Of a stretch of DNA of 64,000 nt, positions 195 through 59,150 are shown one piece after another (positions within the stretch are counted from its first letter, which is position 1; each line of letters begins with the position of its first letter). The DNA is from Phallusia mammillata (lineage: Eukaryota): positions 8,928,001 to 8,992,000 of the forward strand of contig OZ281499.1 of the NCBI GenBank assembly GCA_965637545.1, read 5' to 3'. The notes beneath the pieces were generated by a model. It saw only the letters and a list, made by a program, of their open reading frames with translations. It did not search any database and had not been told where the DNA came from. Position numbers and translations under genes: made by a program.

Positions 195-3100
195 CTCAAC
201 GCAGTAGTACATGGCGATAGCCACGACGAGGATAGAAAGCATGACCCACAACTTAATTGAAACACAAATGAAGTTCTGGTACGCAAACGTGATGACGAAT
301 CCAAGTGATTCCCAAACTTTGTAATTTGCAAAGCCCGCTTCTTGATTGGCAGCAAACAGGACTCCGTACAGTGCTAAAACAAGAAAATACTAGTAAAGGC
401 GTTTTCTAAGCTTATTAGGATCTGATAGGTTTTGAATTTAGACTCTAAACCACAGTAAAGCACATTTATCTTTTTCAAAAATACTTGAGCATCAGAGATC
501 ACCTGGATCATAAAGCTTTTTGTTTACTAGCTTTACTCCTAAACGACCTAATAGCTAAAACACTTTACAAAACTTGGTAGCTGTAACATTGTACACTGTG
601 GTGATAGTCAATGATTGATTATAGTTTCTGCTAATTTAACTACAAATAGAGCATGAGACTAAAATTAAATATGACACAAGCTTGTTGCTAGAGCGAAAAC
701 AAACTGTGCAGAATGATAGTCGATAATTTTTCAATAAACAAATTAAAAAAAAAAAAAACTTTGAGTAAAGGTTTCAACTTACAGTTAAGTTGAGTTTGCC
801 ACACAGCATCTGCTATGCCCCAAAGAGCAGGAATAATAAAAAACAGGGCGACCTCATGCGGATAAGGAATCCACACCTAAATCAAATAAATATTAGAAAC
901 TGGTTAAGTGTTTGAAATAGATTAAGCCCAGTCACCTCCCAAATACTGCTGGTACAGAGCGTATCTAAATTTCAAGCAATGATTTTTATTCTTAAACTTT
1001 TTTATTATCGTTACCCCTGAGAAGAAGTAGATTAAGTTTATTAAACCCTGTTTAAAAACACTAAAGTTAATTTGATGATACAAAATGACAAAATGTGATT
1101 TCTCCTTAAAAATGCCAAACTACTCCTTTGGGAGTAATTACCCACAGGTTACGAATTGCAGTTTTCAATACCTGGTGGTCGCTTTGACATACAAGGCAAT
1201 GCTCGGTAATCGCGTAGTTACCACAATAAGCCAAATCAAAAGGCTTGCGATATGTTATACATAGAAAACAATCGTACCAGAAGAGTAATAAAAAGCGATA
1301 GAAAGATGGCAGTGGCCGCAGTAAAGAGGGGAATTCTTCCAACGTATTTTTCAATTCTTCCAAACAGCAGAGAACAAATTGCATCACACCCGGCGAAGCA
1401 AATAAGGACAAAACCCACCCAGTTCACTCCGAGTGGACAAGTCACGAAAGACTAAAACGAGAAGCATTTGGGGAAATTATCGAAATATGTTAAATGTTTA
1501 TGCGGATGGTCACATTAATTGCCAAAACTTCATTATGTTACTCAAATGTTTCGACAAGTTTATTGTCACTGCTGTTATTTTAAGGATTATGACAAAAACA
1601 CGTCAGCAAAAAAAAATACATTTTTAAACATGATTATTAATAACCCTTTATTGCGGCATTTAGCACATCTATCTATTTATTTTTCAGTTTTTCACGGGGT
1701 TAAAAAAATGCTCAAAATCATACTGCATTACCGGCTTCGGATGGTAACACCATAACACAGTTGCAGGGCTTTTAGGGTCGATTTCGACGTCGGGCTGTAC
1801 GTTCAGACTTAGAAATATTAAAATAATAATAATAATTATAGGTTTCCTTTTTTATCACTGATTTTAATCAATCAATACAAATAATTATTTATTTTGTGAT
1901 CTTATATTACCGTCGTAGACTATACAATATAAAACCACAAAAAGGCATGTTGTTTTTACCCGGGTAAAATCTCCGGTAAGAAATGCCTGTTCAAAACCGC
2001 TGAACACTGTAATAGCAATTAACAGCAGTTGCCGTTTGTCCCTCATATGTTTGAAGGTTGCAATTAATAAAGAGAAAGGTCCTCGGGTTTCCTGAGACCT
2101 AACAAAACATATACAACTTGATCGGAAATTTAACATGTAAAGGTAACGAAACAAGGCTACATGCTTTTAAATAGTCCTGCTCAATACAAATGTCGTACAA
2201 AAGCCTGCATAGTACTAAAAAATATTCCACCACCTTAGCTACTAATTCACTGTTTAAAAAATAAATTGTTATTAAACTATCGTACAACTTGTTGTTTATT
2301 TGCTTGACTTGTTTTAACAGACAAAAAGATCACTTTATTTACCTATGCATTTACCCAGAATTTCCGGTGTTTCATACAAACGGAATAAAATAATACACGT
2401 TTCAGTGTAGTTTTGGATTACTCGTTTAAAAATAGAAGAGAAACATAACTTAAATCCCGATTTATACCGGTGAAACACTAGTGTGGGATTTGCTTGTGAG
2501 AGGATGACTAAGAAACGCGATTAATTAAAAGCACTAATCCATATAAATTACTAGTACCATAGAAGTACTATATTCGTGAATTTTATTCTATCAATTGTTG
2601 AAAAAATAGTTGATCACGCAACAAAGTTTAGCAAATTTGATATTAAAATTATCGCAATCGTTTTAACAAACAACACACAATGAAATTAATAGCAAGTCCA
2701 CACCTGATTTTAATTTTGTCAGCTCCAAAAGCCATTATGAGTGCCCCGCTCATGCTAACCGCCGTATAGATTCCCATTAAAATATATATTGTTGATTTGG
2801 AGGGACCCGAACTGTTCAGTTCAGTAACTGGACACTCACTGCTGTTAAACTGAATTCTAGCAGCAGACAAATTGCCTTGGCAATCATTTCTGCCGCAATT
2901 TTCTTGCATATATGTTTCGTTGTAACAGGTGGGAAATTCTAAAACCAAAAGTAGATATAATTTTTATTGATTTTTATTTGTTACCACAAACTTTCACTGG
3001 GCATCGTAAAAGAAGATTTAAACTACAATTCTTAAAAATTGTGTTGTCTCCAACTTTTTAACCTGTTACATTTTTACCAAAATAGTAAACAGATATATCA

Positions 3101-9130: not shown

Positions 9131-9182
9131 GCATAGACGCTTCAGGGCTGATCCCAGTTATGAATTTATGTTCATATTAACT

Positions 9183-9802: not shown

Positions 9803-9913
9803 TCTTAACCGATACTGGTCAATCTGGCGATCCCCTACTACGAAGCTGACATGTGCAGCATACGAGGCAGGCAACGGTGCTTGTGATTCGACTTTCGGCG
9901 GATTCTCCACTGG

Positions 9914-9987
9914 GCCTGTGTAGCTCAGTTGGTAGAGCGCGAGTCCCGGAAAGACTCCTGTCGTGGGTTCGAATCCCACCGCAGGAT
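9914..9987 (+). tRNA. tRNA-like sequence (SINE head or tRNA pseudogene), apparent anticodon GGA
   Basis: Cloverleaf: acceptor GCCTGTG/CGCAGGA (6/7), D arm GCTC/GAGC, anticodon stem GAGTC/GACTC with loop CCGGAAA, 5-nt variable region, T arm GTGGG-TTCGAAT-CCCAC. Perfect A and B boxes; T5 immediately downstream. Non-canonical: C at position 33, an extra base before the anticodon stem, no long variable arm. Confidence 0.55.
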
Positions 9988-14478: not shown

Positions 14479-16844
14479 TACTAAACCTTAGTTGTCAACC
14501 TTTAGAGGCTCAGAGACTTGACTTGACTTGACTTACCACTGTTCAAGACCTGATTACAAAACGTGCATTATTATGTACAAGCCCAGCCCAGTTTCGGCCA
14601 AGTTAAAAAATTTCTTCACAAATAATCTGTTTTAGTAAAGAAATAATCTGGTAACTTGCTGAAAGACCTGGTAAGTTTTCTAATAAGCAACAAGGCAGTG
14701 ATGTCAAGAGTGAAACAAACAGCACGTAATTTGAACTCACGAAAACGGAAGGATCTTAAACACGAGCGCTAGTCAGTCCAGAAACTGCGTCGGAAATTGT
14801 CACCCGAGGCATGACTGTGACGTCACAAACCTTTCCCGAGTTGTAGAACGGGTCGATCAACTACAGTTTGTACCCACATGGTTCGTGGTTACCATGGTAT
14901 ACAAAATGTTTGAAGGGATTTAACTCTCGCTGCGCTGGGTTAGACACGGATACTTATTGTTGGGTTGCTTAGCCTCGAAAGTCTTTGTGTACGCAGTCAT
15001 TCGAAGTTAGTAAGGCAGAGAGATACAGATAAATCTAGTTTCTGTCCAGCATACAACTGGAAAACCTTCTTATTTTTTGGCTGTGTCGTTACCTTAAATT
15101 ACTCTGTAACTAAGTTTGTACCACAGTTTTGGAAACGTTTATTTCCATGTTAAAATCTGTTAACTTGTGGAGAATCTTTGCTGGAATTACAATGTAATTG
15201 GAAATGATTCCCAGAATCGAATTACTAGGATTTATAACTAAGTTTATAGATTGAAATCGTTTTTATAACGTTGATATTAGGTTTGTTTACAAAATATTCG
15301 GCCACTTAATAACCCACGTAAGTCAATACTCCTTTAATAAATGGACACACATTATACGCGGTCTGTAATACCGCCTATTGTTTTTATACCGGTATGTAAT
15401 CATGGTCCAGGCTACTGGTGTACAACGAAACGCCGGTTGATGCGTACGCAACTTCCTGTGCTACGATTGGCTAAAATGGTAGGCGTAACCGGTTTGTGGG
15501 TGGGACTTGCTGCGGTGTTTTGGTCTGTGCTGTACATTTAGAGTCTAATCATAGTGGTTCGACTTTTTTTTAACTGGTTTGATTAGACGTAATTTATCAC
15601 AAACGTTGTATTTTGAAAATGACTGTAGAGGCAGAAACGAACTGTACAAGGTGTACGAAGTGAACCTAAAAGCTTTAGTAAATTATAGGTTCCTGTTAAG
15701 CAGCTTAAGAAGGCGTAGAGTGTAGTAAAGAGCAAGTTATGAGTTAAATTTATGCTGCCAACCCAGCCAAATGATTAAAACAGCTAGGCTATATTTAACA
15801 TACAAAACAAATCATTAAACTGAGCTAATCGTATTTTATTATGTGTTTTACATATCACCACAGAAAAGAGTTTGACTTCAAAGTTATACATGTTACTACA
15901 AAAAAGGGTTAGGTATAAAAGTAAAATTGTTCTTTGTCCTTTCTTCTACTACGGCCCACTGTAAAAAACGTCCTATTTATGAATGGGCCAGCTCGCAACG
16001 ACTGTCTCTGAAAAATGTATTGTTTTGGAAACCCAGTCTAAATCGTTAACCAATGTGTTTGTTTGTTTGGTTAGAAAACTGATATAACCTGATGTGTAGC
16101 CTACAGACAAGGCAAGAAATACCTCACATAACGTAGAAAAGATTATGACACACATTTGACAATTTTTTTAACGTTCAATCTATGTTCTTAATGGTACAGA
16201 CTTTGTGGTGTAACTTTTGTGTTCCACACGCAGCATTTTACCTGTTTGACATCGCGGCCTATAAAAAAGTCTTTCAGTAAAATTGACGCGTTTTCTTAGC
16301 GTAGCTGACATACAATGAGGCCAAACCTAGATCAGCTACGCTTGTGAATTTGTAAAGTTAGGAACCGACACATATGTAGGTGTGGTAGGGGTCGCTTTGG
16401 GATAATTTTATCTCTTTTTATAGGCATGCCAGGCCTTTTTTGTCTTCATTGCAGTGGTGCAATAGTACGTTACTTTAGAATATTAGATTTGAACATAAAG
16501 TTAGGGGTATTTCTTCAATTTCATCTTGAATTAGAATTCAGTACCTGTGCAGCGGTTACCATTTTTCTACTATGGTCCTTGAAAGGTTATTCAGCAAGCT
16601 GAAGTCCTGTATAGCTTTCTCGTATATGATAGTCAGAGAATAACAAACAAATTTCTTTATTTGACATACCTCACCAACTCTAACACTAGCGGCTTTCAGT
16701 ACAAAGCAAACCAAACTTTCCCATTCATCAGCAAACAACTGAATCAGGTTTTAAAACGACGCGTAAATGGGTATTGTTCGTCATAATGCTTGATTCATGC
16801 GCATATTTGTCGTCAAGGGACTAAGGCAAATGTTTTTGAAACTT

Positions 16845-17646: not shown

Positions 17647-20600
17647 ATGATAAGTGAATCAGACTCAAGTAACAGTAACGGGGATGCACCCATCCACCAT
17701 TCGAAAGCGGATGAACTGTGCAATCTCGCTGATGAAAAGAAAAAAAAGGGCTCAATTTCAAATGAGAGCTTTGAAAATCTGGAAGCCATATTGGCAAGCC
17801 CATCACTAAAAAAGTAAATAATAATAGCTATAATACATTGTGTTTTTGTCTAAAATTTGGGTGTTTTTCAATTCGTTCTTTTTCGGCAGAAAAGAAATCA
17901 GAAAGATTTGGAAGAACTTGATCCTTATCTGCCTTGCATTTGTTGGCAATTTTACTGCTTTTAACGGCGCCTCTGCCCTTCAATCTAGTCTTAACTCGGA
18001 TGAAGGGCTTGGGACAGCTTCACTTTCTATTATCTACGCGACATTAATCATATCGGCAATGTTTCTACCTACCTATGGTAAGTTTTGTATTTGCTTTGCG
18101 GTGAGTTATAAACAAAAGATAGTATAGTAGAATGTGTTATGCTTGAAAACACATACACAACAAGATCCCTAATATCGTCATTTCGACACTGGACCCGAAT
18201 CCTTCAACAATTTTTGGCCACGAGATGCCACAAAACCATGATGTTTCTTTACTTTGCATTCATGTACATAGGATCAAAATGTGTGACGGGTAGGAACTTG
18301 GGTGAATGGTCCTGGGCCCCTGATCTATTTACAGACAATAAAAAAATAATTCTCGTAAAAAGGGGTGTATGAGTCATTTTTTGCAAGCGTTGTTGTTCTT
18401 TCATGGACAAACGCTGACGACCTTGCTTAAATCTCACGACAGATGCGTATGCGAGATTTTTTTAATGTTGGTGTATTATCATACACATATATGCCATAGA
18501 TAAAAGAAAGAAAAAATGTACACAACATGTATGCGCTGGTCACAAACAAAACACAGACCCTGCGATTGCGTTTGTAATATCGACCGAGTGTAAATGTTGT
18601 GTAACACTGTTCGTAACGCTCCCTACATTTCAATAGCAATCCACGATTGAGTGGTTACAAATGCCTTTTAAACATACCTTGGGTATATGCTACGTCCGTT
18701 TGCAAAACAATCAACATAATCCACAAAAAATCGACAACATTTTTAAACATTTAGTATTCAGAATATGTTTTTGCCGTGTCATTCTATTGAACAAAATAAA
18801 TTTAAACCAGATACGGTACCAAAAATATTTTATACGTAAAGGCACAATAAAATAATTCAAGTGTAACTTTGCAGATCATAACGCTATTTTTAGCAACAAA
18901 ACAGTTCCAAAATTTTCCGGTAAAAATGTTCTCTTTTGGCTCACGTTCACGTCAGTGCGTGCTCAATCACGCGTATAATCACGTGGCGTGACGTACGGAC
19001 AAATCAGATTATTTTTGGGCTGTATAAAGTGATCTATTGAGAACTATTTCTCATGCCTCTTTCAATTGAGCGACTCATAATCCACGTACATTATTAAAAC
19101 CCCATCTATATATAACATATAGAAGGATGTACCCTTTCCTGATTGGCAACGTTTTGGACTAGCTATGCGTACCGTTGCCCAGCGACAGCCAAGGGACTTT
19201 TCCAAATACCGGGAACTGACCAAATTTGAAGTGTAGTGTAAGCAGACTTTGAGTAAACAGTTTTGGAATGTTGCGTGCGAATCCAGTAGTAAGTACATGG
19301 GAACAAGTCAGTATTAGTAATTCAATACATCATAACCTTTTTGACACATTTTTCTCGACACGACTTCATTGCAAAGCGTTTTGTATCGCAAACTCAAAAA
19401 CAAGTGAGGTTCTAGCAAGTCATTTGTTGTGTATGTACTTTAAAAAACAGCTAAACATCACGTACTACGAATCCTGGATTTTATGATTCGGCGAAACGGA
19501 ATTTCCCGACCAGCCAACCGCAACCGTCACGCATGATTTCATTTGTGCGTCTTGGGGGCGTATACGCGACGTGACGTGGCAAACTCGAGTGCCTTTTTTC
19601 GCCGAATTCCTGTTTATCGCAATTTTAGGTACTTGCCATAGGTTAGGTACACATAAAAGCTACGGCTAAACTAACATTTTATGTGACATTGTTGGATTTA
19701 TAGCCTAGCCTATGTGGTTTGTGTTGACTTTTGTATTTAAACATCGCTCAAGTTGATTAATAAATTCCGGGTTTATGGAGTTGAGTTTTGACACCATGAC
19801 AATACGTTGTGTGCCTTTGGGTGGATTAAGTGCGATGCTAAGGTTTGTTGTTTGCGTTCACGTTCTAAGTGCGCCTCAAGGGGCTTTGGACACAAGCTGG
19901 CCTTTAAATTTTATTGGCTTTACTGCGACTGAAAGGAGTGGTATGCAGTGCGGTTACACCTAGCCCATGAAAAAGCATTTTTTAATATTTTTTGTCACTA
20001 CGAAATGAGAGATTTGTTGGAATAAATTACACTCTGATGTTACTCATCTTTTGCGGAAATTCATTCCTTCGACCAACCAAACTTTAAATATAAAAAAATG
20101 AAATTGTATTAAAACTTCATGATGTTTAATATCACGATCATGTTAACACCTAATATTTACGTTGTTTCGTTTTGTGTCAGTTCATATTAAGCAAGGCATG
20201 TCGGGTAACTTTGAACTAAGCAGTGTTAAAGACAAGGTGCTAATTAGCACATAGGCGTAATAACAAAAAGCCTGCCTACACACGCAATTGCGGATAACAG
20301 CCGCCCACCATTGAAAAGCATGCACCTCCTGAGGTTTTATTGGTATGAAGGTTGAATATACTGTACTAAAATCGTTTTGATATGTACTTTAAATTGGACC
20401 AGGAGTAGTTGGTAAATTGCAAGTTTTTGCAAAACTGAAAACTTGTAGAGAAAAACGTTTATTAATATGTTTTTTTTATTTTCAGTAATCAACTGGCTTG
20501 GTTGCAAATGGACGATCGTTGTAGCGATTTGCGGCTACGTCACATATCCTCTCGCCAATTTTTACCCACATTGGGGAACTCTTATAACAAGCTCTATATT

Positions 20601-41794: not shown

Positions 41795-42897
41795 TCTTTT
41801 CACGCCTGAAGTGCAACACAAAAGAATGTACATAAACCAGTTCTACAACTCGACAAACACTTGTGACGTCACAGTCCTGTCTTGAAAAGAGTATCTCACC
41901 TAGGATAATATGCAAGATTATCAGTGTTTGCTAGATCGTTCGGGTTTTGTAGGTTTGACTCTCATGTCGTGGGTTGCGTTTATGACACTAATGTCATTGC
42001 TATTAGCGCAAAACTTTTTGAGCAATTGTAACAATTATGTTCGGTTGTGTTAAATGTTTAATGAACCCTTATGCGATACAACACTCTTGTGTAATCCTGC
42101 AGAAATTACATAGAAGTTACTTTAGTAGGTTAACTGTCAGAAACCGTGTTCCCGTTTCTTGAATCAAAGATATTTCTGCGTATATGTACAGGATAAAACG
42201 TTGATTGTTGTCAACTGGTGAATATAACAACAAATCTAAACTATATCTTTCGTTATAATAGCCCAACAAAACGTTTCAAAATCCATTGAGTAACCACAAT
42301 GTATGATAGCAGGCACGCAATACAGATTTACCGCAGATATCAGATGCACGATTTAAAAACAACAAAACAGTCTTTGCTTTGACTCTAAAGAAGAGTGTGT
42401 TTAGTTTAATCTGATTGGTATCTTCAACTGTTCTCATCGTGCCTTTAACTCTTTATTTTAGAATTGTTGATAGGGCAGCGGAATGGCTGTACGACTGAGT
42501 GGTAAAATTAAAATTAATGCATCGATCAAAACCACATGAGCATGTTGTCACTTTCTTAAAAACATGGTTGTTTCAAGAATTCTAATGCCGTCTTTAGCAA
42601 CCAATAGGTTTTTAATGACTGCAAAAGTTCCTTGTTGTTGTGTAGCTGCAGACGTTTTGACGGGCAGGTAAAGTGGTTAAAGTCGCCTTTTTGAAGCATA
42701 GACATTATTTGATTTGTTTGGTTTGGACCAACCACAAAACGATTACAACATTTAATGCAAATTCTGTACGAGGCATCATTCCTTCTATTTCAAACTGTTT
42801 AAGTAAATATTTCAAGTATCCTTAACTCCTCAAGTAACAAGTAAAAAAACGGATTTATGTAGACAAAGAAGTAAACAGAACAAACAATGCATTTACT

Positions 42898-44000
42898 GAG
42901 GCTGAATGCAGTTTATCCGAGCATATCTTTCACACAAGAACTAGAGTTACACAACACCATCCATTACTTAGATGTGCTCGTAACGAATACACCCAATGGC
43001 ATAGTCACTACCACCTACCGCAAGCCTACCCACAGTGGACTTTACAGCAAGTGGGACAGCTTTGTACCCCTTCACCATAAACGCAACCTCGTTAACTGCC
43101 TCATAAAAAGAGCATATAACATCTCCAGTTCCTACAAAATCATGGACCAAGAGTTTCGAACAGTAAAATCCATGCTTGCCTCCAATGGATACCCTGTCAC
43201 CTTCCTTGACGGGTGTGTTAAAGGGTTTCTCAACAGATGTCATCGCCCCACACTTCCATCTTCACCCAAACGATCGGAAACCACACTATTGGTGACCATG
43301 CGCCTCCCCTTTATAGGAACCACATCTTACAATATAGCGCGTGAGCTCAAGGGATTTGTGAAACGCACAATACTCGATGTGGAACTACGGGTTATCCACA
43401 AACCGACAAAAATTGGCAGTTTCTTTTCTATCAAGGACCGCCCTTGCAACAACCTCCGCTGCAGTGTTGTTTACAGGCTGACATGTTCGTGTGGGTCCTC
43501 ATATATTGGTGAGACGCAGCGAAACTTAATAACTCGAATAAAAGAGCACCAGACCAACGAAAAATCGGAAGTGTGTAGGCATCTCCAGACTAACCCTATG
43601 CATAGGGTCAACTTCACAGAACCAGAAATATTGGACGCAACGTCAGATCGGATTCGTTTGTTTATTCTGGAGTCGCTTCTTATCCAGCAACATGACCGGG
43701 GCTGAACGTGGACACAACTTCGATGCCCCTGCGGCTTTTTAACACCTAATTCACTGGTTTTATCGTTATCTCCATTTTGTCGGCAACCTTTTATCAGCGT
43801 GACGCAGTTGATTAAACTTTTCTCCTTACTTTTTCTGTATATAAACGCGCTTGTTTCCACTTGTGCATTACATTTTCACTGATGATGACAATAGTTTTGT
43901 CGAAACGTTTGTTTTAATAAAATGAATACGTTTTACTCTACGTCGCTGGCAATTTGCTTTTTATTAAAGCTGTTATTCAAGTCCGTGTCTTGTGTACCTA
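42898..44000 (+). mobile_element. 5'-truncated Penelope-like retroelement (RT C-terminus + GIY-YIG endonuclease + pLTR with hammerhead)
   Basis: ORF 42887-43705: HYLDVLV, YRKPTHSGLY (RT thumb), VVYRLTCSCGSSYIGETQRNLITRIKEH (GIY-YIG), ILESLLI; terminal 1-nt frameshift. Perfect 12-bp TSD AATGCATTTACT (42886-42897, 44001-44012). Confidence 0.93.
43866..43925 (+). ncRNA. Minimal type-I hammerhead ribozyme of the Penelope pLTR
   Basis: CTGATGA (43879-85), stem II GACAA-TAGTT-TTGTC, GAAA, stem III ACGT, triplet GTT, stem I CATTTTCA / TG..AAAATG. Confidence 0.72.
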
Positions 44001-44504: not shown

Positions 44505-45132
44505 TAATTGCCTGGCTTAGTTGCAAATCGTTGTAGCGATTTGCGGCTACATCACATATCCTCTCGCTAATTTTTATCCACATTAGGAAACTCTTATACC
44601 AAGTTTAGTTATCGATGAACTCTCTGCTGCAACCTGTGGTCGGCCAAGTGCACAAAACTGTTAAGTTATAATTATACAACTGTTAGATGTAGGTAATATT
44701 TTGTTTGTCACCACTATCAGTCTCTGTTTGTTATTTCCTGATCAGAAGTTTATTCAGAGTTTAGCTTTAGCCAAAACTCATATTTCATAATGCTTATTAT
44801 TTTCTTGGCAGTATGTCCTACCTGCTACAACAAAACATTTATTGAACAACAATGTGGCAAAAGTGACTCCCAGGGTGACTTGTCTGCAGCCAGATTGAAA
44901 TTCAACAACTATGAGTGTTCAATGTAAAAGCATATAGAGCCAATAAATGATAAGCTGCAGACAGTGCACACTGTTTCGACCTATAAGGTCTCATATGAGT
45001 GTTCAGTTTCTGATCTGAACATTTCGGGACCGACTTATTCTACAATCTATACATTTTAATGGGAATTTACACTGCCAGCGGATTCTTTGGGGCGTTTGTA
45101 ATGGCTGTTGGTGTCGATAACATTAAAGTCAG
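44505..45132 (+). pseudogene. UNC93A: Decayed seventh UNC93A-like copy (exon 3-like and exon 5-like remnants; exon 4 absent)
   Basis: 44505-44653 matches exon 3 with deletions and a TGG>TAG stop in HWG. 44812-45132 matches exon 5 (ends GTCGATAACATTAAAGTCAG|gt as in copy 2) with a frameshift and a 72-bp insertion. Confidence 0.87.
44922..44993 (-). mobile_element. HH-A hammerhead element, 5'-truncated insertion with 12-bp TSD
   Basis: Minus strand TGA-GACC-TTATA-GGTC-GAAA-CAGTGTGCACTG-TC-TGCAGC-TTATCATTTATTGGCTCTATATGCTTTTACAT. TSD TATGAGTGTTCA at 44910-44921 and 44994-45005. Confidence 0.85.
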
Positions 45133-46896: not shown

Positions 46897-49800
46897 ATGA
46901 GCGAAACAAGTTCGATCAAGGCGGATGAATTGTGGGAAGGAGACATCGAAAATCTAAAACGCATTAAATCTAATCCTGAGGAAAAAAAGTATGAAATAAT
47001 TGTGACAAAATAGTTTACTACAGTTTTACTTTCATCGATATGAGGTTATTGAGGTTATTTATTTTCTTTAGAAAAGAAATAAGGAAGATTTGGAAGAACT
47101 TGATCCTTATCTGCATCGCATTTGTGGGAAACTTTACTGCTTTTAACGGGGCATCCGCTCTTCAATCCAGTCTTAACTCTGATGAAGGACTTGGAACAGC
47201 TTCGCTATCTGTTATATACGGGACGCTCATCATTTCGGCATTGTTCCTTCCCACTTACGGTAAAAATTTATCTCATTATATAAATGGTTTCCACCTTTTT
47301 TTTTCTGTGGCTCATGTTATTCAAATCGGTAAATGCATAAAACATTTGAAACCACTTATTTAACACAAAATTAAAATTTAGTGTAACATCACAAATCAGT
47401 ACATCTTCAAAGCTCTGTGGCTTCTCCAACATGGTTTTGTGGCTTATTGCAGGGTTATGGGCCCCTGTTTGGGAACCAGTCCTTTATGCTTTGTACAACC
47501 AGTTTTCACCTCTTTTAAAAGTACCAAGCATTATTTTATCTTTAAAATATACATGCATTTTAACCGAAAAAAGGCCTTATACCTTATGTGAGTTGAGTAA
47601 CTTTTATTGCAAGTCCTGCCCAACACTAAGTTGTGTACAATTTACTGTTTTGTTGACATCGAAGGTTCGTTGGCAGCAGAAAGTCCCACAATGAACAAAG
47701 ATTTTTTTTATTTGTCCAATTAACATTGTGCTCGTAAACCTCTAATGTAGTAATCTTTATGTGGAAAACGTTTATATGGCGGATGTTCTCACAAAACTAA
47801 CTTTACAGCCTTGTGACCATAAAGACGAAGTTTCGGGTCAATGACGCTTTGCAAAAAAATTTATAGCTTAACTGCCTGACGGTTATTGGTTTCCGCTCTT
47901 TTACACCAAAATAAACCATTTAAGGGAACAATCGGCAAACAAATCGTTGCGCTAAACGATTAAAGAAATATCTGGAAGGCTTCATGAATATTCCATGGTG
48001 CTTTTTCCACCATTGCTTACAAATGAGTTTTAAAAATTTAATCAGCGACATTTTTCAGTGATCAACTTTCTCGGCTGCAAATGGACGATCGTTGTAGCGA
48101 TTTGCGGTTACGTCACATATCCACTCGCTAACTTCTACCCACATTGGGGAACTCTTATGCCAAGCTCCATATTTGTTGGTCTCTCTGCTGCGCCCTTGTG
48201 GTCGGCCAAGTGTGCCTACCTTACAACAAATGCTAAAAGGTTTGACACATTTATAGCTATAATTCCAAAGAAACTGATACTGGCAAATTCTAATGCTGTA
48301 ACGCAATTTTCCTAACGTTTTTTCCACATCTCATACCAAACACAAGTTTAAACCTTATGGTGCTGCTTTTTTCTAGAAACGGAAGATACTTTAATAACGA
48401 AATACCTTTGCGTTTCAATAAAGAAATGCTAAACTTTCCAAATTTGTATACGGTCTAAATTTTAACATAAAAGATTGAACACAAAGGTATTTAGTGATAT
48501 CATTATTTCTGAGACTAAACCTAAACATCTCCAAGTCTCAGAACGTTGGAATTTGATCTAGTTCAGATCAGCAATGGAACCAAATGTTTTTTGTAAAACA
48601 TGCAGGTACGCCATTTTAACACATGACAAAAAAGATGGAGAGGAAAGCGACATAAGTTTAACCAAACTTGTGGATGCAATAGTAAACAGGTTCTTCGGAA
48701 TTTTTTTCCTATTCTTTCAGTCGACGCAAATCATTGGAAATCTCATTTCATCTTTTGTTCTGTCGGCTGATGTCATCAATGATCTTGGTTAGTTTAACTT
48801 GCGCTTCTTTAAACAATAAATAAACCTAAATATTGCTTCATGATACAGAATTCCCTACATGCTTCAACGAAACCTATATTGAAGAAAATTGTGGTAAAAA
48901 TGACTGCCAGGGTGACTTAAACGCAGCTAGAATCCAGTATAACAGCAGTGAGTGTCCCGTGAGCGACCTCAATAGCTCCGGTCCGTCGGACGACACAATC
49001 TACATACTAATGGGAATATACACTGCTATTGGTTTGAGCGGTGCACTTCTCATGGCCCTTGCAGTCGACAACATCAAAATAAGGTATTTTGTTTTGGTCA
49101 ATATAAAAGCAAGCAAAAAAAGACATGTGTTTATTTTGATTTGCAGAGAAAAAGAAACTCGTGGGCTGTTTGCTTTGCTATTCGCAACAATAGAACATAT
49201 GAAGGACAAGCGACAACTGCTGCTAATTCCTATCACAATGTACAGTGGCTTTGAGCAAGCTTTTCTAACTGGAGACTACACCAGGGTAATGCGTATGCTT
49301 ATTGTATGTCTTAACTCAACCCATTTACTTTGGATGAAAATCAATTGACAGCGCCCTACTCTCTTTAAAATAATGTTCTTAAAAGTCAAAAACAGAGGCA
49401 TTTGCTGTAACCATTTCCTGTTTTTTAGTCGTTTATTACTTGCCCAATCGGAGTGAACTGGGTTGGATTTGTGTTGATTTGCTACGGTGGCTGTGATGCG
49501 ATTTTTTCTTTGCTGTGCGGTGGGGCTGAGAAGTATGTTGGAAGGTGGCCACTTTTTTCTGTAGCTGCTCTCATCAATCTTGGTCTCATCATTACGTTCC
49601 AAGTTAGTCAGTGTGTGTTTATCACCAAGCTTTACTATTTTTCGAAATGCTTATAGATTTGCAATTTGTTGTCATATCCGACCATTTTTAGGTGTGGTTG
49701 CCATATCCCAACGAGGTAGCTCTCTTTTTTGTCCTTCCTGCTCTCTGGGGGTTGGCAGATGCTGTATGGCAGACCCAGCTTAACGGTAAGTTATATTTGC

Positions 49801-50483
49801 ATGCACATGATCTTTACAACAATATAGTATTGGTCGATACTTTCAGTATGAATTCTAATAATCTAAGTAATTGACAGCTCTGTTATTCCGAGTTTTCCGA
49901 TTAGCATTATTACAAACCAGAGACAAAAAACACTTCCACATTTTCACAGTTGATTTTTTTGTTGCAGCGCTTTACGGAGTGCTTTTCGTAGGCAACCAAG
50001 AAGCAAGTTTTGCCAACTACCGGCTTTGGGAGTCAATTGGATTCGTGATTTCTTTTGGATATCAGAACTTTGTCTGTGTTTCAGACAAACTTTGGGTGAT
50101 ACTTTCTGTTCTTATCGTTGGCATGACACTCTACTATTATGTTGAGGTAGGATTTGTTCGTTAGGTTAGGAAGTGTTTCAACATTTGTAAATAGCTAACC
50201 GTAGATTGTAGCATCATATGAGCAATGAACATCGACCCATGGGCGGAAAATGTTGTTTGTAGTTTATGGGGTTGGTAACTAACAAAATCGGCATATAATT
50301 GACTTATGCGGTATTAACCTTTTGATCAAAATCTTACAGTTTCGAGAAAGAAAGAAACCCAATCAAACTGTGACATTTAATGATGAACATAAAAGCAAGA
50401 ATAACATGGCATTTAGGAAGACATCTGTAAGCACAATAAGCGCCAATGGGGTCGACAACGGTGGTTTTTCGACTGAGCTCTAG
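46897..50483 (+). CDS. UNC93A: UNC93A-like MFS membrane protein, copy 5 (complete)
   Basis: Exons 46897-46988, 47072-47259, 48059-48239, 48606-48787 (39 nt longer than in the other copies), 48849-49083, 49147-49285, 49429-49602, 49692-49785, 49968-50146, 50340-50483 (..GVDNGGFSTEL*). Confidence 0.93.
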
Positions 50484-50967: not shown

Positions 50968-51062
50968 AAATAAGCCGCAGACAGTGCACACTGTTTCGAT
51001 CTAAAAGGTCCTATTAGTGCAGCTTGTGAAACAAACTATAGGCCGTATTAGCTGGTGTAGCA
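50968..51062 (-). ncRNA. HH-A hammerhead element, full span but core-mutated
   Basis: Minus strand GCTGCA-CTAATAG-GACC-TTTTA-GATC-GAAA-CAGTGTGCACTG-TC-TGCGGC. CTGATGA is changed to CTAATAG. Confidence 0.75.
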
Positions 51063-53304: not shown

Positions 53305-56300
53305 ATGGAAGAAGGTAAAAGGAGCGATGTCAGCGAGGAATCGAAGTGGGATGGGGATATTGATGAGCTGACAAACATTAAGAATAATCCTATCAGAAAA
53401 AAGTAAGAGAATATTGCAAAAATAATGTGCAGACAATGCACATTTTTTCGACCTACAGGGTCTCAATAGTACAGATGGATGGTTACAAGAGGTAGGCCTA
53501 TCCTTGTCACCAGCTGCAATGATGAGTCCCTGTAGGCCAGGGGTGGGCAACCTTTGTCACTGTGAGGCCAAATACAATTGCTATGATTGGATCGCGGGCC
53601 GCACCTTTATATAACACAATGTGATCTTACTTCGTTGCATACCAAAAATGCCTTACTACAAGAAACATTCGCATTTGATTCTAACAGCACATTGTCAGGT
53701 CGCAGAAAAACAGCATCAGGCCCACTAATCTGCTCAAAAAATTTTAATAGTTGGACTTGTTTGCCAGTACATTTGAAATCCAAGTGTCTCTGCGGGCCGC
53801 ACAACTTTAATCAAAGGGCCGCATGCGGTCCACGGGCCGCAGGTTGCCCACCCCTGCTGTAGGCAGTGGTGGGATTCAAATTTTTGGTTAGCCGGTTTTT
53901 TCACAAAAGTCATATTTTTTAGCCGATTCTGTTACAAAAAGTCCATTGACAGTAACCAGTAATGCTCACCAGTTTCCTGATCTCATAAAGTTTCGTGAGA
54001 CGGTTCTATAGAACCGGTGCGAACCGGCTAAATCCCACCACTGCCATAGGTCGAAACAGTGTGCACTGTCTGCAGCTTATCTTTTTTTGGCTTGATGCTT
54101 TTTCATTGCAAATGTATATATTCGTTTTTACTGCGATTAGGTATAGTTTTGGTATGGCAAGTCTGTATCATTATGCGCAAACCACATGCTAATGTTTTAT
54201 AAAACGATTTTGCAAATATTGGCTAATAATTTTTTTGATTGTTCATGATTCAAATACAATTAATTATCCTGAAATCAATAAACAGATTCTTGTAATTCTT
54301 CTAAGTGAATAAAAGTTCTTCATATTATCTGAAATATGTGTACAGAACCGAGATTAGAAAGATCTGGAAGAACCTGATCCTCATCTGTATTTCATTTGTG
54401 GGAAACTTTACGGCTTTTAACGGTGCTTCCGCTCTTCAATCAAGCCTTAACTCAGAGGAAGGACTTGGAACAGCTTCGCTTGCGATCATTTACGCCTCAC
54501 TTATTATATCGGCGCTGTTCCTTCCCACTTATGGTAAGGCTTATCTCTGATTGAAGTAACATAGTGGTAAGATTATGTCGGTTCATGTAGATCTGGTTTT
54601 GGAAACGTAAAGACCTCCCCGAACCGGTTGTTTAGTCGTAGTATTTAGGCTTATAGGTCAGTTGGATCGGATTGAAAGCTGGGTAGCTAGGTCATGTACT
54701 TACAAACATGGTTGTACTCTTGAGATCGACTAAGGGCACTTGTTGTGAATATGTTTAACATTACATTACAGTAAAAACTTACTAAAAAAAGTGAAAAACA
54801 ACAAATGGAACTTTATTGCAGGAAAACACCCAAAAGTCACAATGGTATTTGATCTTTATTTGTACTGAAAACCTAGAGGCCGTTAAACTCCATATAATGT
54901 CAGTAACGTTCGGGTTTCTAAAGAACTTTGAAAGTGAATGTCCTCACAAACTTTTACCATCCTGTAGTCACAGTAACAGAGTTACGAGTCTGACAACGCT
55001 TTTGTGTTTGCGAACAAAATTGCAGTTTAACGATTTGATGATTGTTTGGTTCCGCTGTTTTACTCCAAAGGCAACAGATTAAATGCTGATAAAGTTTGTA
55101 AAAGAAAGTAAAACTATTTTAGTACTAGGACAAACAAATAATTCTGAAGAAATCGTAAACCTCTGTTAGTGTTTTGATATAACCATAGTTACTTAGCGGG
55201 TAAAAATTTACTGGCGTTTGGAATTCAAACACCTGTATCTGTTCTTTCGCAGTCATCAATTTTCTCGGCTGCAAATGGACGATCGTTGTAGCGATTTGCG
55301 GCTATGTCACTTATCCTCTGGCCAATTTTTACCCACACTGGGGAACTCTTATTCCAAGCTCCATATTTGTTGGACTCTCTGCTGCCCCCTTATGGTCAGC
55401 TAAATGCACTTACCTTACTACAAGTGCCAAAAGGTTTGTAAATAAAAGTAAGATTTATATGGAATATTATGTGTATTAGGTTCTGGTGAAGATACTAAAG
55501 TATAAACTCAAATAACAAAAGTTTGCTAAAATCCGAAAGATGACGTAAAGAACATAGTTATTTTAGTGTATGGAACTGAATTAGAGGTTAGTGAGTAAGT
55601 TTTTCAGTTAGTTTACTGTTATTTTTTTATAAAACCTCAGGCTATACCCCAACCCTAATGTCTCTCATTGTCAGCATTTTCACACATAATTTCGTCAACA
55701 TTTCAAAATTTCAATACGGATTCGAACCCAGTATGCTCCCAAAGAATCCCGATCACGGTTTTTAAGACTGTATATGGGTCAGGCGCGCTGGACCATTCGG
55801 CCAAGTTCCAACCCATTTTCAGCAATTTTTTTAGCTTAATTCTTAATGCTCTTTACGCCACCTATCGTTGTTTCACAAACTTTTGTGATTTGAGTTCTCA
55901 CCTTAGTACCTCAACCTTGAATTCTATACCGTAAATATATATGAGTTCAGATGTGTATGCCCAATCGCTAACCTTTGGTGCTAACTCATCTTATTCTGAT
56001 TTAGTTGTAAAGTATCGTTAAGATTTTCAATTATGTTGAAAATGCATTGAGGTCATGTTTCATTTAGGTACGCATTTTTAACGGATGAAAGTGTGGATGC
56101 CATGGTAAACAGGTTCTTTGGAATTTTCTTCCTATTCTTCCAGTCGACGCAGATCATTGGAAACCTCATTTCATCTTTCATACTTTCAGCTGACTCCACT
56201 AACAATCTCGGTTAGTTAAACTTGAGCTTCTTCAGGCAATAGAAAAACCTAGTTATTGCTTCATGATGTAGAATTCCCCACATGCTTCAACGAGACCTAC

Positions 56301-59150
56301 ATTGAAGAAAATTGTGGTAAAAATGACTGCCAGGGTGACTTGACGGCAGCTAGAATCCAGTATAACAGCAGCGAGTGTCCTGTGAGCGACCTCAATAGTT
56401 CAGGACCATCCAACTCTACCATCTACACACTGATGGGAATATACACCGCTATTGGTTTCAGTGGTGCACTTCTCATGGCTCTTGCGGTGGATCCCATACA
56501 AATAAGGTTTTGCTATAATCTGTAACTTTTGGATAATGAAGAATTACTTTGGTGTTACGCATATTTTGATTGACAGAAAGAAAGAAACTCGTGGACCGTT
56601 TGATTTGCTCATTGCAACAATATTTCACATGAAGGATAAACGACAACTGCTGCTAATTCCTATCACAATGTACAGTGGCTTTGAGCAAGCTTTTCTGACT
56701 GGAGACTACACCAGGGTAATAGGCCTACACCAGTGGTTCCCAAACTTTTTAATATTTTTTTCTAAACGGTCCCCTTGCCATTATTTCGGCTCGCGGTCCT
56801 TAAGCCTAAATGTGTATTTCATAAAAACAAAAGTTGATTGCAGGATTTTAGCCAGTTGTGCAAAATTGCGCATAATAATCATCCAAGGACAGCATGTGAC
56901 ATCACAAACAGGACAAAAACATTACGATTGTGCGCGAACAATTGCATTTATTATAGTTGTCATTCAATAAAGGCCATTGTTTAGCAATGGAGACAGTCGA
57001 TTCTTAATTCTACTTTGATTTAAACTTATTTAGTGGCACAAACTGACGCCAAATAAGATTATAGAATTACTTCAATCGCCTCGCGGTCCCCTCAAAATTG
57101 CCCCACGGACCCCAGTTTGGGAACCGCTGGCCTACACTAACACTGTACATGATTTATGATTAGTTTTAGTAAATTGAGGTGTTTATGGATGCTTTTGTAA
57201 AGAACTTTACGAAACCTCAGGAAAAATCATTACATCCACCGTTAAATGACCATTTCCTCCAACATTTTTAGTCGTTTATTACTTGCCCAATCGGAGTGAA
57301 CTGGGTTGGATTCGTATTGATTTGCTACGGTGCCTGCGATTCGGTATTCTCTTTGCTGTTCGGTGGGGCTGAGAAGTATGTTGGAAGGTGGCCACTTTTT
57401 ACTGGAGCAACATTGATCAACCTTGCCCTTATAATTACCTTCCAGGTAATCATAATAACATTGATCCTATTCCACTGGTCTAGTCTTTGCACGTTTGGTA
57501 GTGTAGTAAATGTTAATGATTTTTAGGTCTGGCTGCCCTATCCCAATGAGGTAGCTCTTTTCTTTGTTCTTCCTGCTCTATGGGGGTTGGCGGATGCTGT
57601 ATGGCAGACCCAGCTTAACGGTAAGTTACAAATATGGTTACAAGTTAAACCCGGCACTGTTTTCGCTGCATTTCTTGTTTTATGATAAGCTGCTGACAGT
57701 GCACACAGAAGTACCAACAGTGCAGCTGATGAAAATACATAGGCCGTATTGGCTATAGTAGCTCCATCTAACGGTGCAGCATCTAACGGTATTCTTGTTT
57801 TCAATCCAAGAAACTTCCGTAATATTCTTGAAAGTATACTTGGCGGATATGATGTTATTGTTTTTTAGGCTTGAAAGTGTCCTCGTAAGAAACACGTGCA
57901 GTTATCCCTATTTTTTGCAGCTCTCTACGGAGTACTTTTCGTAACCAATCAAGAAGCAAGTTTTGCCAACTACCGGCTTTGGGAGTCAATCGGCTATGTG
58001 ATTTCATTTGGATATCAGAACTTTATCTGTGTTTCGGTCAAACTCTGGGTGATGCTGTCTGTTCTTATCGTTGGCATGGCACTTTACTACTACGTTGAGG
58101 TAGGCCAGTTTTTAGTCGTGATAAACAAGTGTTCCCTTTTCAGTTTGGGGCTACAGCGTGCATGTAATGTCGCTGATTGGGGATACACAAAGATCTCGTA
58201 TTTGTCTGCAAAGGTGAAAAATAGAGGGGGCATGGATCAAACAGCAGTTGTGCAGTAACGATTGGTCGGGTACAAAGAACAATCAAAGCATGCAGTGTTA
58301 CTTTTAGTGGAAGTTGCCCAAATGTCCTAAGCAACAGATTTTTAACCTATGAATAACTCGCGTACCATCGACGTCTTTTCATCGCCTTGTAGCACCCAAA
58401 CCCTGCTTGGGTGGGTAGACCAATAGCTATAGGCCTATTCTTCTTGACTAGGCTAGCATATTTCTAAAACCGACAAGGTTAGCAATTCCAAAGGCATCGT
58501 CAAGACATTTTGGACGAGTATTGTCCAAAACCATAGCTAATTAGTTCAGGGGTTCTTAACCAGGGGTGCACGCAGCCCCAAGGGGTGCGAGAACTGTTCC
58601 TTGGGGTTGCGGGGAGGCTGAATCATTAAGGTTGGTTAGGTCTATTATATATAAATACAAAAACCCAGCGGGGTGCGAAAACTGGTTGGTGATTGGAAAG
58701 GAGTGCGAAAATTGGTTGGTGATTGGAAAGGGGTGCAGCAACGCAAAAAGTTTAAGAACCACTGAATTAGTTGGTGTTGGGCCAATTGGGTTGCATTTCA
58801 TAATCTGACTTGACTTACGTATAGCACAAAGCCACCACCATAAACACTCCGGTGTAACACTAATGGTACGCGTAGTACAGGTTGAGAACCATTGCTCTGT
58901 CCAGGTGTACGACCTGCAGTTTTATTTCACGTGCACCTAAGTAAGTATTTCCTTCGCCGTTTCAAACTGTAAATTTTCCAGGCGTGTTATTTACCTTTCT
59001 TCATAATTTTAGATTTTGGAAAGGAAGACACCCAATCGGACGTCAGCAATCAACGACGAAGAAAACAGAAAGGACAACATTTCTTCTATCAGTAGCAGGA
59101 GTAGATATGACAGTGGGGTTGACAACGTGGCCTTTGCGGGGGAACTTTAG
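53305..59150 (+). CDS. UNC93A: UNC93A-like MFS membrane protein, copy 6 (complete)
   Basis: Exons 53305-53402 (MEEGKRSD..WDGDIDELTNIKNNP), 54346-54533, 55253-55433, 56068-56210, 56272-56506, 56577-56715, 57272-57445, 57527-57620, 57921-58099, 59013-59150 (..GVDNVAFAGEL*). Confidence 0.9.
53538..53856. mobile_element. hAT-type MITE
   Basis: TIR CAGGGGTGGGCAACC / GGTTGCCCACCCCTG; perfect TSD CTGTAGGC. Confidence 0.92.
53864..54043. mobile_element. hAT-type MITE (CAGTGGTGGGATT TIR)
   Basis: TIR CAGTGGTGGGATT / AATCCCACCACTG; flanks CTGTAGG / CCATAGGT (degenerate TSD). Same family as 61775-61922. Confidence 0.85.
55718..55814 (-). mobile_element. tRNA-derived SINE family A copy (intron 3 of copy 6)
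   Basis: Minus strand TTGGCCGAATGGTCCAGCGCGCCTGACCCATATAC...GATCGGGATTC...GGGTTCGAATCC; matches 1-95 and 8706-8770. Confidence 0.72.
56731..57129. mobile_element. hAT-type MITE
   Basis: TIR CAGTGGTTCCCAAAC / GTTTGGGAACCGCTG; perfect TSD GCCTACAC. Confidence 0.9.
57683..57790 (-). ncRNA. HH-A element, degenerate (stem II and GAAA region deleted)
   Basis: Plus strand GATAAGCTGCTGACAGTGCACAC...CAGTGCAGCTG...ATAGGCCGTATTGGCTA..CCATCTAACGG is colinear with the other HH-A copies. Confidence 0.65.
58547..58764. mobile_element. hAT-type MITE
   Basis: TIR CAGGGGTTCTTAACC / TTTAAGAACCACTG; perfect TSD AATTAGTT; reverse-complement sibling of 33459-33675. Confidence 0.92.

What the first reader, a model, noticed from the sequence alone, without database searches (positions are those of the whole stretch)
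195..59150. Seven-copy tandem expansion of UNC93A-like genes with mixed orientation
Seen: six intact genes and one pseudogene with identical internal exon lengths. Exon 1 falls into two classes (copies 1-4: ..SNESFENLEAILASPSLK; copies 5-6: ..WEGDIENL..NP). The array may continue left of the window. Established: the UNC-93 family (C. elegans UNC-93 K2P-channel regulator, vertebrate UNC93A, TLR chaperone UNC93B1, MFSD11) has the MFS fold and is usually low-copy. Inference: lineage-specific birth-and-death expansion with functional diversification, for example of transport substrates, channel partners or innate-immune receptor trafficking.
Basis: partly seen in the sequence, partly recalled or inferred. 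Interest (0 to 1): 0.72.

Follow-up and report, generated by a model that had tools for sequence, protein, structure and literature searches.

The report
Six-gene UNC93A cluster in an ascidian
A sea-squirt-type genome carries six intact, long-diverged copies and one decayed remnant of the membrane-protein gene UNC93A at a spot where Ciona has only one copy: a real but fairly ordinary lineage-specific gene-family expansion.

Summary
Between 195 and 59150 lie six UNC93A-like genes in the order - + + - + +, plus a two-exon relic. Each gene has 10 coding exons. All 48 internal exons have AG/GT borders. Internal exon lengths are 188/181/143/235/139/174/94/179 nt in every copy, except copy 5 exon 4, which is 39 nt longer. 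Copy 1 lacks its last exon at the window edge.

The copies are old: 71-86 % nucleotide identity, dS 0.6 to saturated. All are under purifying selection (dN/dS 0.04-0.16), so they are not assembly or haplotype artefacts.

The closest named relative is the Ciona UNC93A-like protein (65-71 % identity), so the window is tunicate DNA; the species was not identified. The Ciona locus has one gene with the same exon structure beside the same convergent WD40 (PEX7-like) neighbour. The six copies form one clade (UFBoot 86). The expansion is therefore lineage-specific.

It is not unusual. Styela clava has its own small mixed-orientation cluster, and a mollusc-like contig has a tandem pair.

Functional diversification is only hinted at. 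Copies 3 and 4 changed family-invariant residues and lost the C-terminal tail. Roles in transport, K2P channels or TLR trafficking are untested. Interest is modest.

The parts
195..5352 (-). UNC93A-like copy 1 (c1). Exons 1-9 of 10 are present: 5352-5225, 4748-4561, 4215-4035, 3583-3441, 2938-2704, 2098-1960, 1451-1278, 876-783, 373-195. The last coding exon lies beyond the left edge of the window. At least 487 codons.
   Evidence: Pfam UNC-93 on exon 3, 29.5 bits; sister to the other five copies
17647..23313 (+). UNC93A-like copy 2 (c2), 10 coding exons, 543 aa. Exons: 17647-17813, 17890-18077, 20486-20666, 20737-20879, 21309-21543, 21844-21982, 22214-22387, 22489-22582, 22689-22867, 23182-23313.
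   Evidence: all 46 family-invariant residues kept
28683..33805 (+). UNC93A-like copy 3 (c3), 520 aa. Exons: 28683-28849, 29114-29301, 30115-30295, 31391-31533, 31621-31855, 32076-32214, 32380-32553, 32644-32737, 32872-33050, 33743-33805. Short C-terminal tail. Two invariant residues changed.
36842..40680 (-). UNC93A-like copy 4 (c4), 516 aa, tail-to-tail with c3. Exons: 40680-40514, 40289-40102, 39667-39487, 39306-39164, 38918-38684, 38252-38114, 37767-37594, 37467-37374, 37278-37100, 36892-36842. Short C-terminal tail. Four invariant residues changed.
44505..45132 (+). Relic of a seventh copy. Only an exon-3-like piece (about 44505-44654: stop, 7-nt deletion) and an exon-5-like piece (44813-45132: 84-nt repeat insert, stop, frameshift) remain. 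Nearest to the c2/c3/c4 group. A weak exon-1-like match lies on the opposite strand at 45708-45773 (E = 0.006).
46897..50483 (+). UNC93A-like copy 5 (c5), 535 aa. Exons: 46897-46988, 47072-47259, 48059-48239, 48606-48787 (182 nt, +13 aa), 48849-49083, 49147-49285, 49429-49602, 49692-49785, 49968-50146, 50340-50483.
53305..59150 (+). UNC93A-like copy 6 (c6), 522 aa, the copy next to the WD40 neighbour. Exons: 53305-53402, 54346-54533, 55253-55433, 56068-56210, 56272-56506, 56577-56715, 57272-57445, 57527-57620, 57921-58099, 59013-59150.
60124..63826 (-). WD40-repeat gene convergent with c6, which marks the right end of the array. It is the orthologue of the 325-aa WD40 gene that follows the single Ciona UNC93A-like gene. 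PEX7-like only by my recall of the PEX7 sequence and a weak match to yeast Pex7p. The 5' limit is not mapped; exon matches reach 62130.
42878..43705 (+). 5'-truncated Penelope-like retroelement (end of the RT plus a GIY-YIG endonuclease) between c4 and the relic.
15424..15539 (+). Non-coding block upstream of c2, 78 % identical to 40925-41041 upstream of c4. Candidate shared promoter or 5'UTR exon.
40925..41041 (-). Partner of the c2 upstream block, 0.25 kb upstream of the c4 start codon.

Best explanation
The window shows a tunicate (ascidian) locus where one ancestral UNC93A-type gene, sitting next to a PEX7-like WD40 gene, was multiplied into at least seven copies. The multiplication involved repeated local duplication, some of it inverted.

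Six copies are still intact. All encode proteins of about 516-543 aa with a major-facilitator fold. One copy has decayed to two exon scraps.

The duplications are old. The first one, c1 against the rest, approaches the depth of the split from the Ciona lineage. The youngest pairs have dS of about 0.6-0.8. All copies have been kept under purifying selection.

Shown:
- gene structures and intactness
- divergence between copies and purifying selection
- monophyly of the six copies
- synteny with a single-copy Ciona locus

Inferred:
- The proteins work like other UNC93A proteins. That is, each is a 12-helix membrane protein acting either as an orphan transporter or, more in line with the worm and fly data, as an auxiliary or trafficking partner of membrane proteins such as two-pore potassium channels.
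- The paralogues are divided mainly by expression, or by what binds their divergent cytosolic tails and the glycosylated, four-cysteine loop between helices 5 and 6.
- c3 and c4 have moved furthest. They share a Gln-to-Met change in the invariant EQAF motif of helix 7. c4 has further changes in helices 10 and 11. Both have lost the conserved C-terminal tail.
For: Anatomy: six complete exon series with canonical splice sites and equal exon lengths, and no stops.

Family:
- Pfam UNC-93 scores 27-29.5 bits on exon 3 of each copy, against a cut-off of 22.9.
- Exons are colinear with bird, mollusc and tunicate UNC93A.
- 42-46 of 46 positions invariant in 58 UNC93A proteins are kept.

Fold, by proxy:
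- An AlphaFold model of the Ciona orthologue has pLDDT 85.9 and pTM 0.86.
- Its best PDB matches are UNC93B1 (TM 0.68-0.78), then MFS transporters.
- Hydropathy run exon by exon finds 10 strong hydrophobic segments.

Age and selection:
- 70.6-89.7 % amino-acid identity and 71-86 % nucleotide identity.
- dS is 0.62 for c5-c6, about 0.77 among c2/c3/c4, and saturated for other pairs.
- dN/dS is 0.04-0.16 overall and <= 0.25 in every exon pooled over the four within-group pairs, including exon 1.

Lineage specificity:
- NJ places the six copies in one clade in 200 of 200 replicates against 21 outside fragments.
- A partitioned ML tree gives UFBoot 86 for that clade inside a tunicate clade supported at 100.
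- The Ciona locus has one gene with the same eight internal exons, followed by the orthologous convergent WD40 gene.

Birth and death: the relic carries a stop, indels and a repeat insertion.

Function by analogy: PMC7591606 (fly CG4928: renal function, membrane potential, proximity to TASK1) and PMC2289394 (worm unc-93).
Against: - No expression data are available, so one or more 'intact' copies could be silent.
- The species is not identified, and the left end of the array lies outside the window.
- Support for monophyly is good but not maximal (86). The position of the window clade among tunicates is unresolved (53).
- Only 10 kb on each side of the Ciona gene could be inspected, and Ciona paralogues elsewhere in that genome were not excluded.
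- Low dS in exon 3 among c2-c4 (0.19-0.35) shows that some gene conversion may have occurred, which can inflate apparent monophyly.
- The window's own proteins were not folded and were not searched as whole proteins. The spliced model was never joined.
- The function of UNC93A itself is unsettled in the literature.
Confidence: 0.78

Rival explanations
1. The array is ancient and shared by ascidians. Gene conversion homogenised the copies, so they only look monophyletic, and Ciona lost its extra copies.
For: Exon 3 has unusually low dS among c2/c3/c4 and a 21-nt run invariant across c2-c6. The c1 split is nearly as deep as the split from Ciona. Styela also has a cluster.
Against: Outside exon 3, dS between copies is 0.6 to saturated, so there is no continuing homogenisation. 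Ciona has one gene at the syntenic site. The two Styela genes are each other's sisters at support 100, so that duplication was independent.
Confidence: 0.1
2. The copies are an assembly or haplotype artefact: collapsed or duplicated alleles.
For: None was found. Ascidians are highly heterozygous (my own knowledge), so the check was worth making.
Against: Exons are only 71-86 % identical at the nucleotide level. Intron lengths differ throughout (61 to 2408 nt). Exon 1 and the tails differ between copies, and the orientations are mixed.
Confidence: 0.01
3. Only some copies are functional. c3 and c4 (and possibly others) are young unprocessed pseudogenes or are drifting towards loss, not diversifying.
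For: c3 and c4 have 2 and 4 replacements at family-invariant positions, a shared EQAF-to-EMAF change, truncated C-terminal tails, long branches and the highest omega values (0.12-0.16).
Against: Both keep open frames over about 517-521 codons and all splice sites. Omega remains far below 1 despite dS of about 0.78.
Confidence: 0.12
4. The paralogues have taken over UNC93B1-like client-specific chaperone roles, for example for Toll-like receptors. Ciona was reported to lack UNC93B1.
For: No UNC93B1 was found in C. intestinalis in PMC7591606. The Ciona orthologue model matches the UNC93B1 structures best. The tails and the ecto-loop are the most divergent parts.
Against: Sequence is much closer to UNC93A: 59 % identity to bird UNC93A in exon 3 against about 35 % to UNC93B1. 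The other exons tested gave no PDB match to UNC93B1. There are no immune-related neighbours and no expression data.
Confidence: 0.05

Closest known systems
UNC93A (vertebrate UNC93A; Drosophila CG4928)
   Same: It has the Pfam UNC-93 signature. It is colinear over all eight internal exons. It is 45-51 % identical to vertebrate UNC93A and 65-71 % to the Ciona UNC93A-like protein. It keeps the CG-x-x-DC loop motif, and 42-46 of 46 family-invariant residues are retained.
   Different: There are six intact linked paralogues instead of the one or two reported in surveyed species (PMC7591606, PMC5671512). The N-terminal exon is longer. c3 and c4 carry changes at invariant sites and have short tails.
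Single UNC93A-like gene of Ciona (P0183; GCA_018327825.2 AP043578.1, about 1.56-1.57 Mb)
   Same: It has the same eight internal exons and the same convergent WD40 neighbour. The N-terminal motif and the C-terminal N-x-A-[YF] motif are shared.
   Different: Ciona has one gene at the locus. Its upstream neighbours are a SAM_PNT gene and an intersectin-like gene, not more UNC93A copies.
Styela clava UNC93A-like cluster (P0191, a partial copy, P0207; OZ123518.1, about 9.858-9.886 Mb)
   Same: It is a local cluster with mixed orientation that includes a truncated copy, and it has the same exon structure.
   Different: It has only two intact genes. The duplication was independent: the two Styela genes are sisters at support 100. 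No WD40 neighbour lies within 10 kb.
UNC93B1 (TLR trafficking chaperone; PDB 7C76, 7C77)
   Same: It belongs to the same Pfam family and has the same MFS-like fold. The Ciona orthologue model matches it best.
   Different: Only exon 3 gives a sequence match (E = 7e-6, about 35 % identity). Exons 2 and 8 give none.
C. elegans UNC-93 (partner of the SUP-9 K2P channel)
   Same: It is the founding member of the family and provides the functional analogy for an auxiliary-subunit role (PMC2289394, PMC7591606).
   Different: It is very distant in sequence (20.6 % identity to human UNC93A according to PMC7591606). No channel partner is encoded in the window.

Membership tests
UNC-93 family (Pfam PF05978) | Match to the family profile above Pfam's gathering score | tested here: met
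   Exon 3 alone of each of the six copies scores 27.0-29.5 bits against a cut-off of 22.9. Exon 6 of c5 scores 19.8 bits, below the cut-off. The test was run exon by exon only.
UNC-93 family (Pfam PF05978) | Twelve-helix major-facilitator-like fold | tested here: met
   Tested by proxy. The model of the Ciona orthologue (65-71 % identical) has pLDDT 85.9 and pTM 0.86. Its best PDB matches are UNC93B1 and then MFS transporters. Exon-wise hydropathy of c2 finds 10 strong hydrophobic segments; two weaker amphipathic helices are expected. The window's own spliced proteins were not folded.
UNC93A subfamily | Closest to UNC93A rather than UNC93B1 or MFSD11 | tested here: inconclusive
   The best named hits are all UNC93A or UNC93A-like. 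The copies sit in a tunicate clade next to vertebrate UNC93A. UNC93B1 is much more distant. No UNC93B1 or MFSD11 sequence was placed in the tree, so orthology is strongly suggested but not formally shown.
UNC93A subfamily | Retention of residues invariant across 58 UNC93A proteins | tested here: met
   c1, c2 and c5 keep 46 of 46. c6 keeps 45. c3 keeps 44. c4 keeps 42.
Lineage-specific tandem array (birth-and-death) | Paralogues adjacent and monophyletic relative to orthologues of other species | tested here: met
   NJ gives 200/200. ML gives UFBoot 86.
Lineage-specific tandem array (birth-and-death) | Fewer copies at the syntenic locus of an outgroup | tested here: met
   The Ciona locus has one gene next to the orthologous WD40 gene, and no other UNC93 exon lies within 10 kb on either side.
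Lineage-specific tandem array (birth-and-death) | Decayed members alongside intact ones | tested here: met
   The two-exon relic at 44505-45132 carries a stop, indels and a repeat insertion.
UNC93B1-type TLR chaperone | Close sequence relationship to UNC93B1 | tested here: not met
   About 35 % identity in exon 3 only. Exons 2 and 8 give no match.
K2P-channel auxiliary subunit (UNC-93/SUP-9 type) | Physical or genetic interaction with a two-pore potassium channel | not testable with these tools
   There is literature analogy only (PMC7591606, PMC2289394).

The most novel reading that the evidence does not exclude
In a tunicate lineage that lacks UNC93B1, the expanded UNC93A paralogues have become client-specific trafficking or regulatory partners for different membrane proteins (K2P channels, TLRs or others). 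The c3/c4 pair would be neofunctionalised through polar-to-hydrophobic changes in helices 7 and 10 and through loss of the C-terminal tail motif.
Probability: 0.08. Interest if true: 0.6.

Novelty: new member of a known kind. Interest (0 to 1): 0.3.

Why it matters
UNC93A is an orphan: it is not settled whether it is a transporter or an auxiliary subunit. A natural series of six constrained paralogues from one locus shows which parts of the protein can change (both tails and the helix 5-6 loop) and which cannot. Two members also altered otherwise invariant helix residues. This gives a ready-made comparison set for structure-function work in a chordate relative.

As genome biology it is a routine case. 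Local duplication of this family recurs in marine invertebrates.

Tried and rejected
- **First word search.** I used a 180-aa read-through ORF as the query. It found only fragments at 50-65 % identity, so it did not identify the organism.
- **Penelope-like ORF.** I tried it as a species marker. The best hits were 51 % identical and unnamed.
- **Mollusc loci.** The Biomphalaria, Mytilus and Potamilus loci and several ENA contigs have a different exon structure: exons 2-4 are fused in the bivalve-like ones. Ten kilobases of flank is too little to count copies there.
- **P0082.** This hit shares the exon 4 / short intron / exon 5 layout and about 50 % of the loop. It comes from run SRR25569784, and no DNA could be fetched for it.
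- **Literature.** Searches for a reported UNC93A expansion found none.
- **Intergenic ORFs.** Twenty were scanned with Pfam. Only the WD40 piece scored, so no other gene was seen inside the array.
- **PEX7 identity of the neighbour.** The PDB search gave generic WD40 matches and only a weak Pex7p match.
- **Left out on purpose.** I did not use the big representative-protein search.
- **Also left out.** I made no search and no fold of a joined spliced protein. Exons were always handled one by one by reference, and the ML tree used one alignment file per exon.
Full report
**What is there.** The window is AT-rich eukaryotic DNA (34-41 % GC) with no N. Exon-sized ORFs with UNC93-like sequence are visible in the ORF list. 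tblastn with exon peptides taken from the window itself finds six complete, colinear exon series and one fragment.

I set the exon borders from DNA alignments of each exon with its flanks, and from explicit acceptor and donor scans. Exon 1 and a short last coding exon were found by translated comparison of the flanks.

Each gene has ten coding exons. All 48 internal exons are bounded by AG and GT behind pyrimidine-rich tracts. Their lengths are 188, 181, 143, 235, 139, 174, 94 and 179 nt in every copy. The one exception is exon 4 of copy 5, which is 182 nt because of an in-frame 39-nt insert. No exon holds a stop codon, and the summed lengths are multiples of three.

| Copy | Strand | CDS span | Protein |
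|---|---|---|---|
| c1 | - | 5352..195 | at least 487 codons; last exon off the left edge |
| c2 | + | 17647..23313 | 543 aa |
| c3 | + | 28683..33805 | 520 aa |
| c4 | - | 40680..36842 | 516 aa |
| c5 | + | 46897..50483 | 535 aa |
| c6 | + | 53305..59150 | 522 aa |

**The seventh copy is a relic.** It consists of two pieces on the + strand.
- The exon-3-like piece (about 44505-44654) has a stop and a 7-nt deletion.
- The exon-5-like piece (44813-45132) is broken by an 84-nt insert, a stop and a frameshift.

The insert recurs at two other places in the window, so it is a small mobile element. The other eight exons are gone. A 5'-truncated Penelope-like element lies just upstream of the relic.

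**A note on method.** Exons were sent one by one by reference. Distances and dN/dS were summed over exons using whole codons only. The maximum-likelihood tree used one alignment file per exon. That is why the window's own proteins were not folded or searched as whole proteins.

**The copies are real and old.** Over the 439 whole codons of exons 2-8, pairwise identity is 70.6-89.7 % at the protein level and 71-86 % at the nucleotide level.

| Pair or group | dS |
|---|---|
| c5-c6 | 0.62 |
| among c2, c3, c4 | about 0.77 |
| all other pairs | saturated |

dN/dS is 0.04-0.16 overall. Pooled over the four within-group pairs it stays at or below 0.25 in every exon, including exon 1. Intron lengths differ throughout, from 61 to 2408 nt.

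This rules out haplotype or assembly duplication. It shows long-term purifying selection on all six copies.

**Family.**
- Exon 3 alone of each copy passes Pfam's UNC-93 gathering score, at 27.0-29.5 bits against 22.9.
- The first word search gave UNC93A fragments at 50-65 % identity.
- The exons are colinear with a bird UNC93A.
- Against solved structures, exon 3 matches UNC93B1 at about 35 % identity (E = 7e-6). Exons 2 and 8 match nothing. The genes are therefore UNC93A-like and not UNC93B1-like.
- Of 46 positions invariant in an alignment of 58 UNC93A proteins, c1, c2 and c5 keep all. c6 keeps 45, c3 keeps 44 and c4 keeps 42.

A model of the nearest named relative, the Ciona protein P0183, has pLDDT 85.9 and pTM 0.86. 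Its best PDB matches are the two UNC93B1 cryo-EM chains (TM 0.68-0.78), followed by SV2A, VMAT, VAChT and FucP. Exon-wise hydropathy of c2 gives ten strong hydrophobic segments. The helix 5-6 loop carries four cysteines and 2-4 N-glycosylation sequons in every copy.

**Whose genome, and is the expansion lineage-specific?** For the third word search I used an alignment of hit fragments with the window's exons added as separate referenced rows. It returned named full-length proteins.

| Relative | Identity to the window's exons 2-8 |
|---|---|
| 'protein unc-93 homolog A-like [Ciona intestinalis]' (P0183) | 65-71 % |
| three unnamed sequences and two Styela clava proteins | 56-68 % |
| vertebrate UNC93A | about 45-51 % |

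The window is therefore tunicate DNA, from a species that I could not identify and that is not the Ciona of that record.

The Ciona locus was read over 10 kb on each side of the gene.
- It contains a single UNC93A-like gene with the same eight internal exons.
- That gene is followed by a convergent 325-aa WD40 gene whose exons are 59-71 % identical to the WD40 gene at 60.1-63.8 kb of the window. Synteny is therefore conserved.
- Upstream in Ciona lie a SAM_PNT gene and an intersectin-like gene, with no further UNC93 exons.

In a neighbour-joining analysis of exons 2-4 against 21 outside fragments, the six copies form a clade in 200 of 200 replicates. The partitioned ML tree included Ciona, Styela, four vertebrates, an echinoderm, four molluscs and a horseshoe crab.
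- The six copies are monophyletic (UFBoot 86) inside a tunicate clade (100).
- c1 is sister to the rest (90).
- (c5,c6) has support 99, and (c2,(c3,c4)) has 95 and 93.

The expansion therefore happened after the split from the sampled tunicates. Its first step is deep. c1 differs from the other copies by 22-29 % of residues, and Ciona differs from the window by 29-35 %. Related genera should therefore share part of the array.

**How unusual is it?** Surveys of model species report one UNC93A gene, with two in fruit fly, mosquito and mouse. They found none of the UNC93B1 type in Ciona (PMC7591606, PMC5671512). I found no paper describing an UNC93A expansion.

The family does duplicate locally elsewhere.
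- Styela clava has one intact gene, a partial copy (exons 6-8) and a second intact gene in the opposite orientation within about 27 kb. The two Styela genes are sisters (100), so that duplication was independent.
- A mollusc-like metagenome contig has two adjacent genes in tandem.
- Another such contig has two genes 60 kb apart.
- Locus tags of Sinanodonta and Potamilus proteins suggest clusters.

But the phenomenon is recurrent, which lowers the surprise.

**Diversification.** The least conserved parts are exon 1, the last exon and the loop half of exon 5.

The two exon-1 classes are real. Both end in a motif that other tunicate proteins share (hydrophobic-x-acidic-x-L/I, then I-K/L/M-S/T-N/S-P, ending in K). 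They are diverged homologues and not unrelated exons.

The C-terminal tail of c2 and c5 keeps an N-x-A/G-[YF] motif also seen in Ciona and Styela. c6 aligns there but has lost the aromatic residue. c3 and c4 stop after 20 and 16 residues and lack the motif.

c3 and c4 share Gln-to-Met in the invariant EQAF motif of helix 7. c4 also changes an invariant Ser in that helix, the invariant Gln of WQTQ (helix 10) and the Glu of RLWES (helix 11). c3 changes an invariant Gly in helix 2 (helix assignment from the model). They also have the longest branches after c1 and the highest omega values.

This is either functional change or relaxed constraint. With omega at or below 0.16 and all splice sites intact, I favour retained but altered function, with low confidence.

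**Verdict.** This is a real, well-preserved, lineage-specific tandem and inverted expansion of UNC93A-type genes in an ascidian, with one decayed member. It is only weakly supported for 'functional diversification'. It is a new member of a known kind of feature, and interest is modest.

Noticed in passing
window 42878-43705 (+); scrap at 35639-35740: A 5'-truncated Penelope-like retroelement with a stop-free 272-aa ORF carrying a GIY-YIG endonuclease domain. Its best database relatives are only 30-51 % identical.
   Followed up: partly
window 9913-9988 (+): A tRNA-like sequence called Ser(GGA) by ARAGORN and scoring 46 bits in Rfam. At 76 nt it lacks the long extra arm of a serine tRNA, so it is probably a SINE head or a pseudo-tRNA.
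   Followed up: no
window 15424-15539 and 40925-41041: A non-coding block 78 % identical between the upstream regions of c2 (2.1 kb from the start codon) and c4 (0.25 kb from it). It may be a shared promoter or an untranslated first exon.
   Followed up: no
exon 3 of c2-c6 (e.g. window 20486-20666, 30115-30295, 39487-39667): Synonymous divergence among c2, c3 and c4 is only 0.19-0.35 in exon 3, against 0.6-1.9 in most other exons. A 21-nt run is invariant in five copies. This points to local gene conversion or a nucleotide-level constraint.
   Followed up: partly
window 44920-44984, 54046-54108, 50970-51010: The insert that breaks exon 5 of the relic is a short repeat that also occurs in c6 intron 1 and downstream of c5.
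   Followed up: partly
window 33459-33675 and 58547-58764: A 219-bp repeat, 87 % identical and inverted, sits in the last intron of both c3 and c6. It is probably a SINE or MITE.
   Followed up: no
window 6328-6800: A tandem repeat with a unit of about 129 bp lies in the 12-kb spacer between c1 and c2.
   Followed up: no
window 60486-60748: A 263-bp palindromic (self-inverted) stretch lies inside the WD40 gene region.
   Followed up: no
window 48606-48787 (c5 exon 4): An in-frame 39-nt insert adds 13 mostly charged residues ahead of helix 5. It is unique to this copy.
   Followed up: partly
L010 and L011 (Styela clava OZ123518.1, about 9.858-9.886 Mb): An independent small cluster: an intact gene, a partial copy (exons 6-8) and a second intact gene in the opposite orientation. 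It has the same exon structure as the window's genes.
   Followed up: yes
L004 (ENA ERZ25073293 ctg31819l, 483534-504172): Two adjacent UNC93A-like genes lie in tandem on a mollusc-like contig. There, exons 2-4 are fused into one exon, as in Mytilus and Potamilus.
   Followed up: partly
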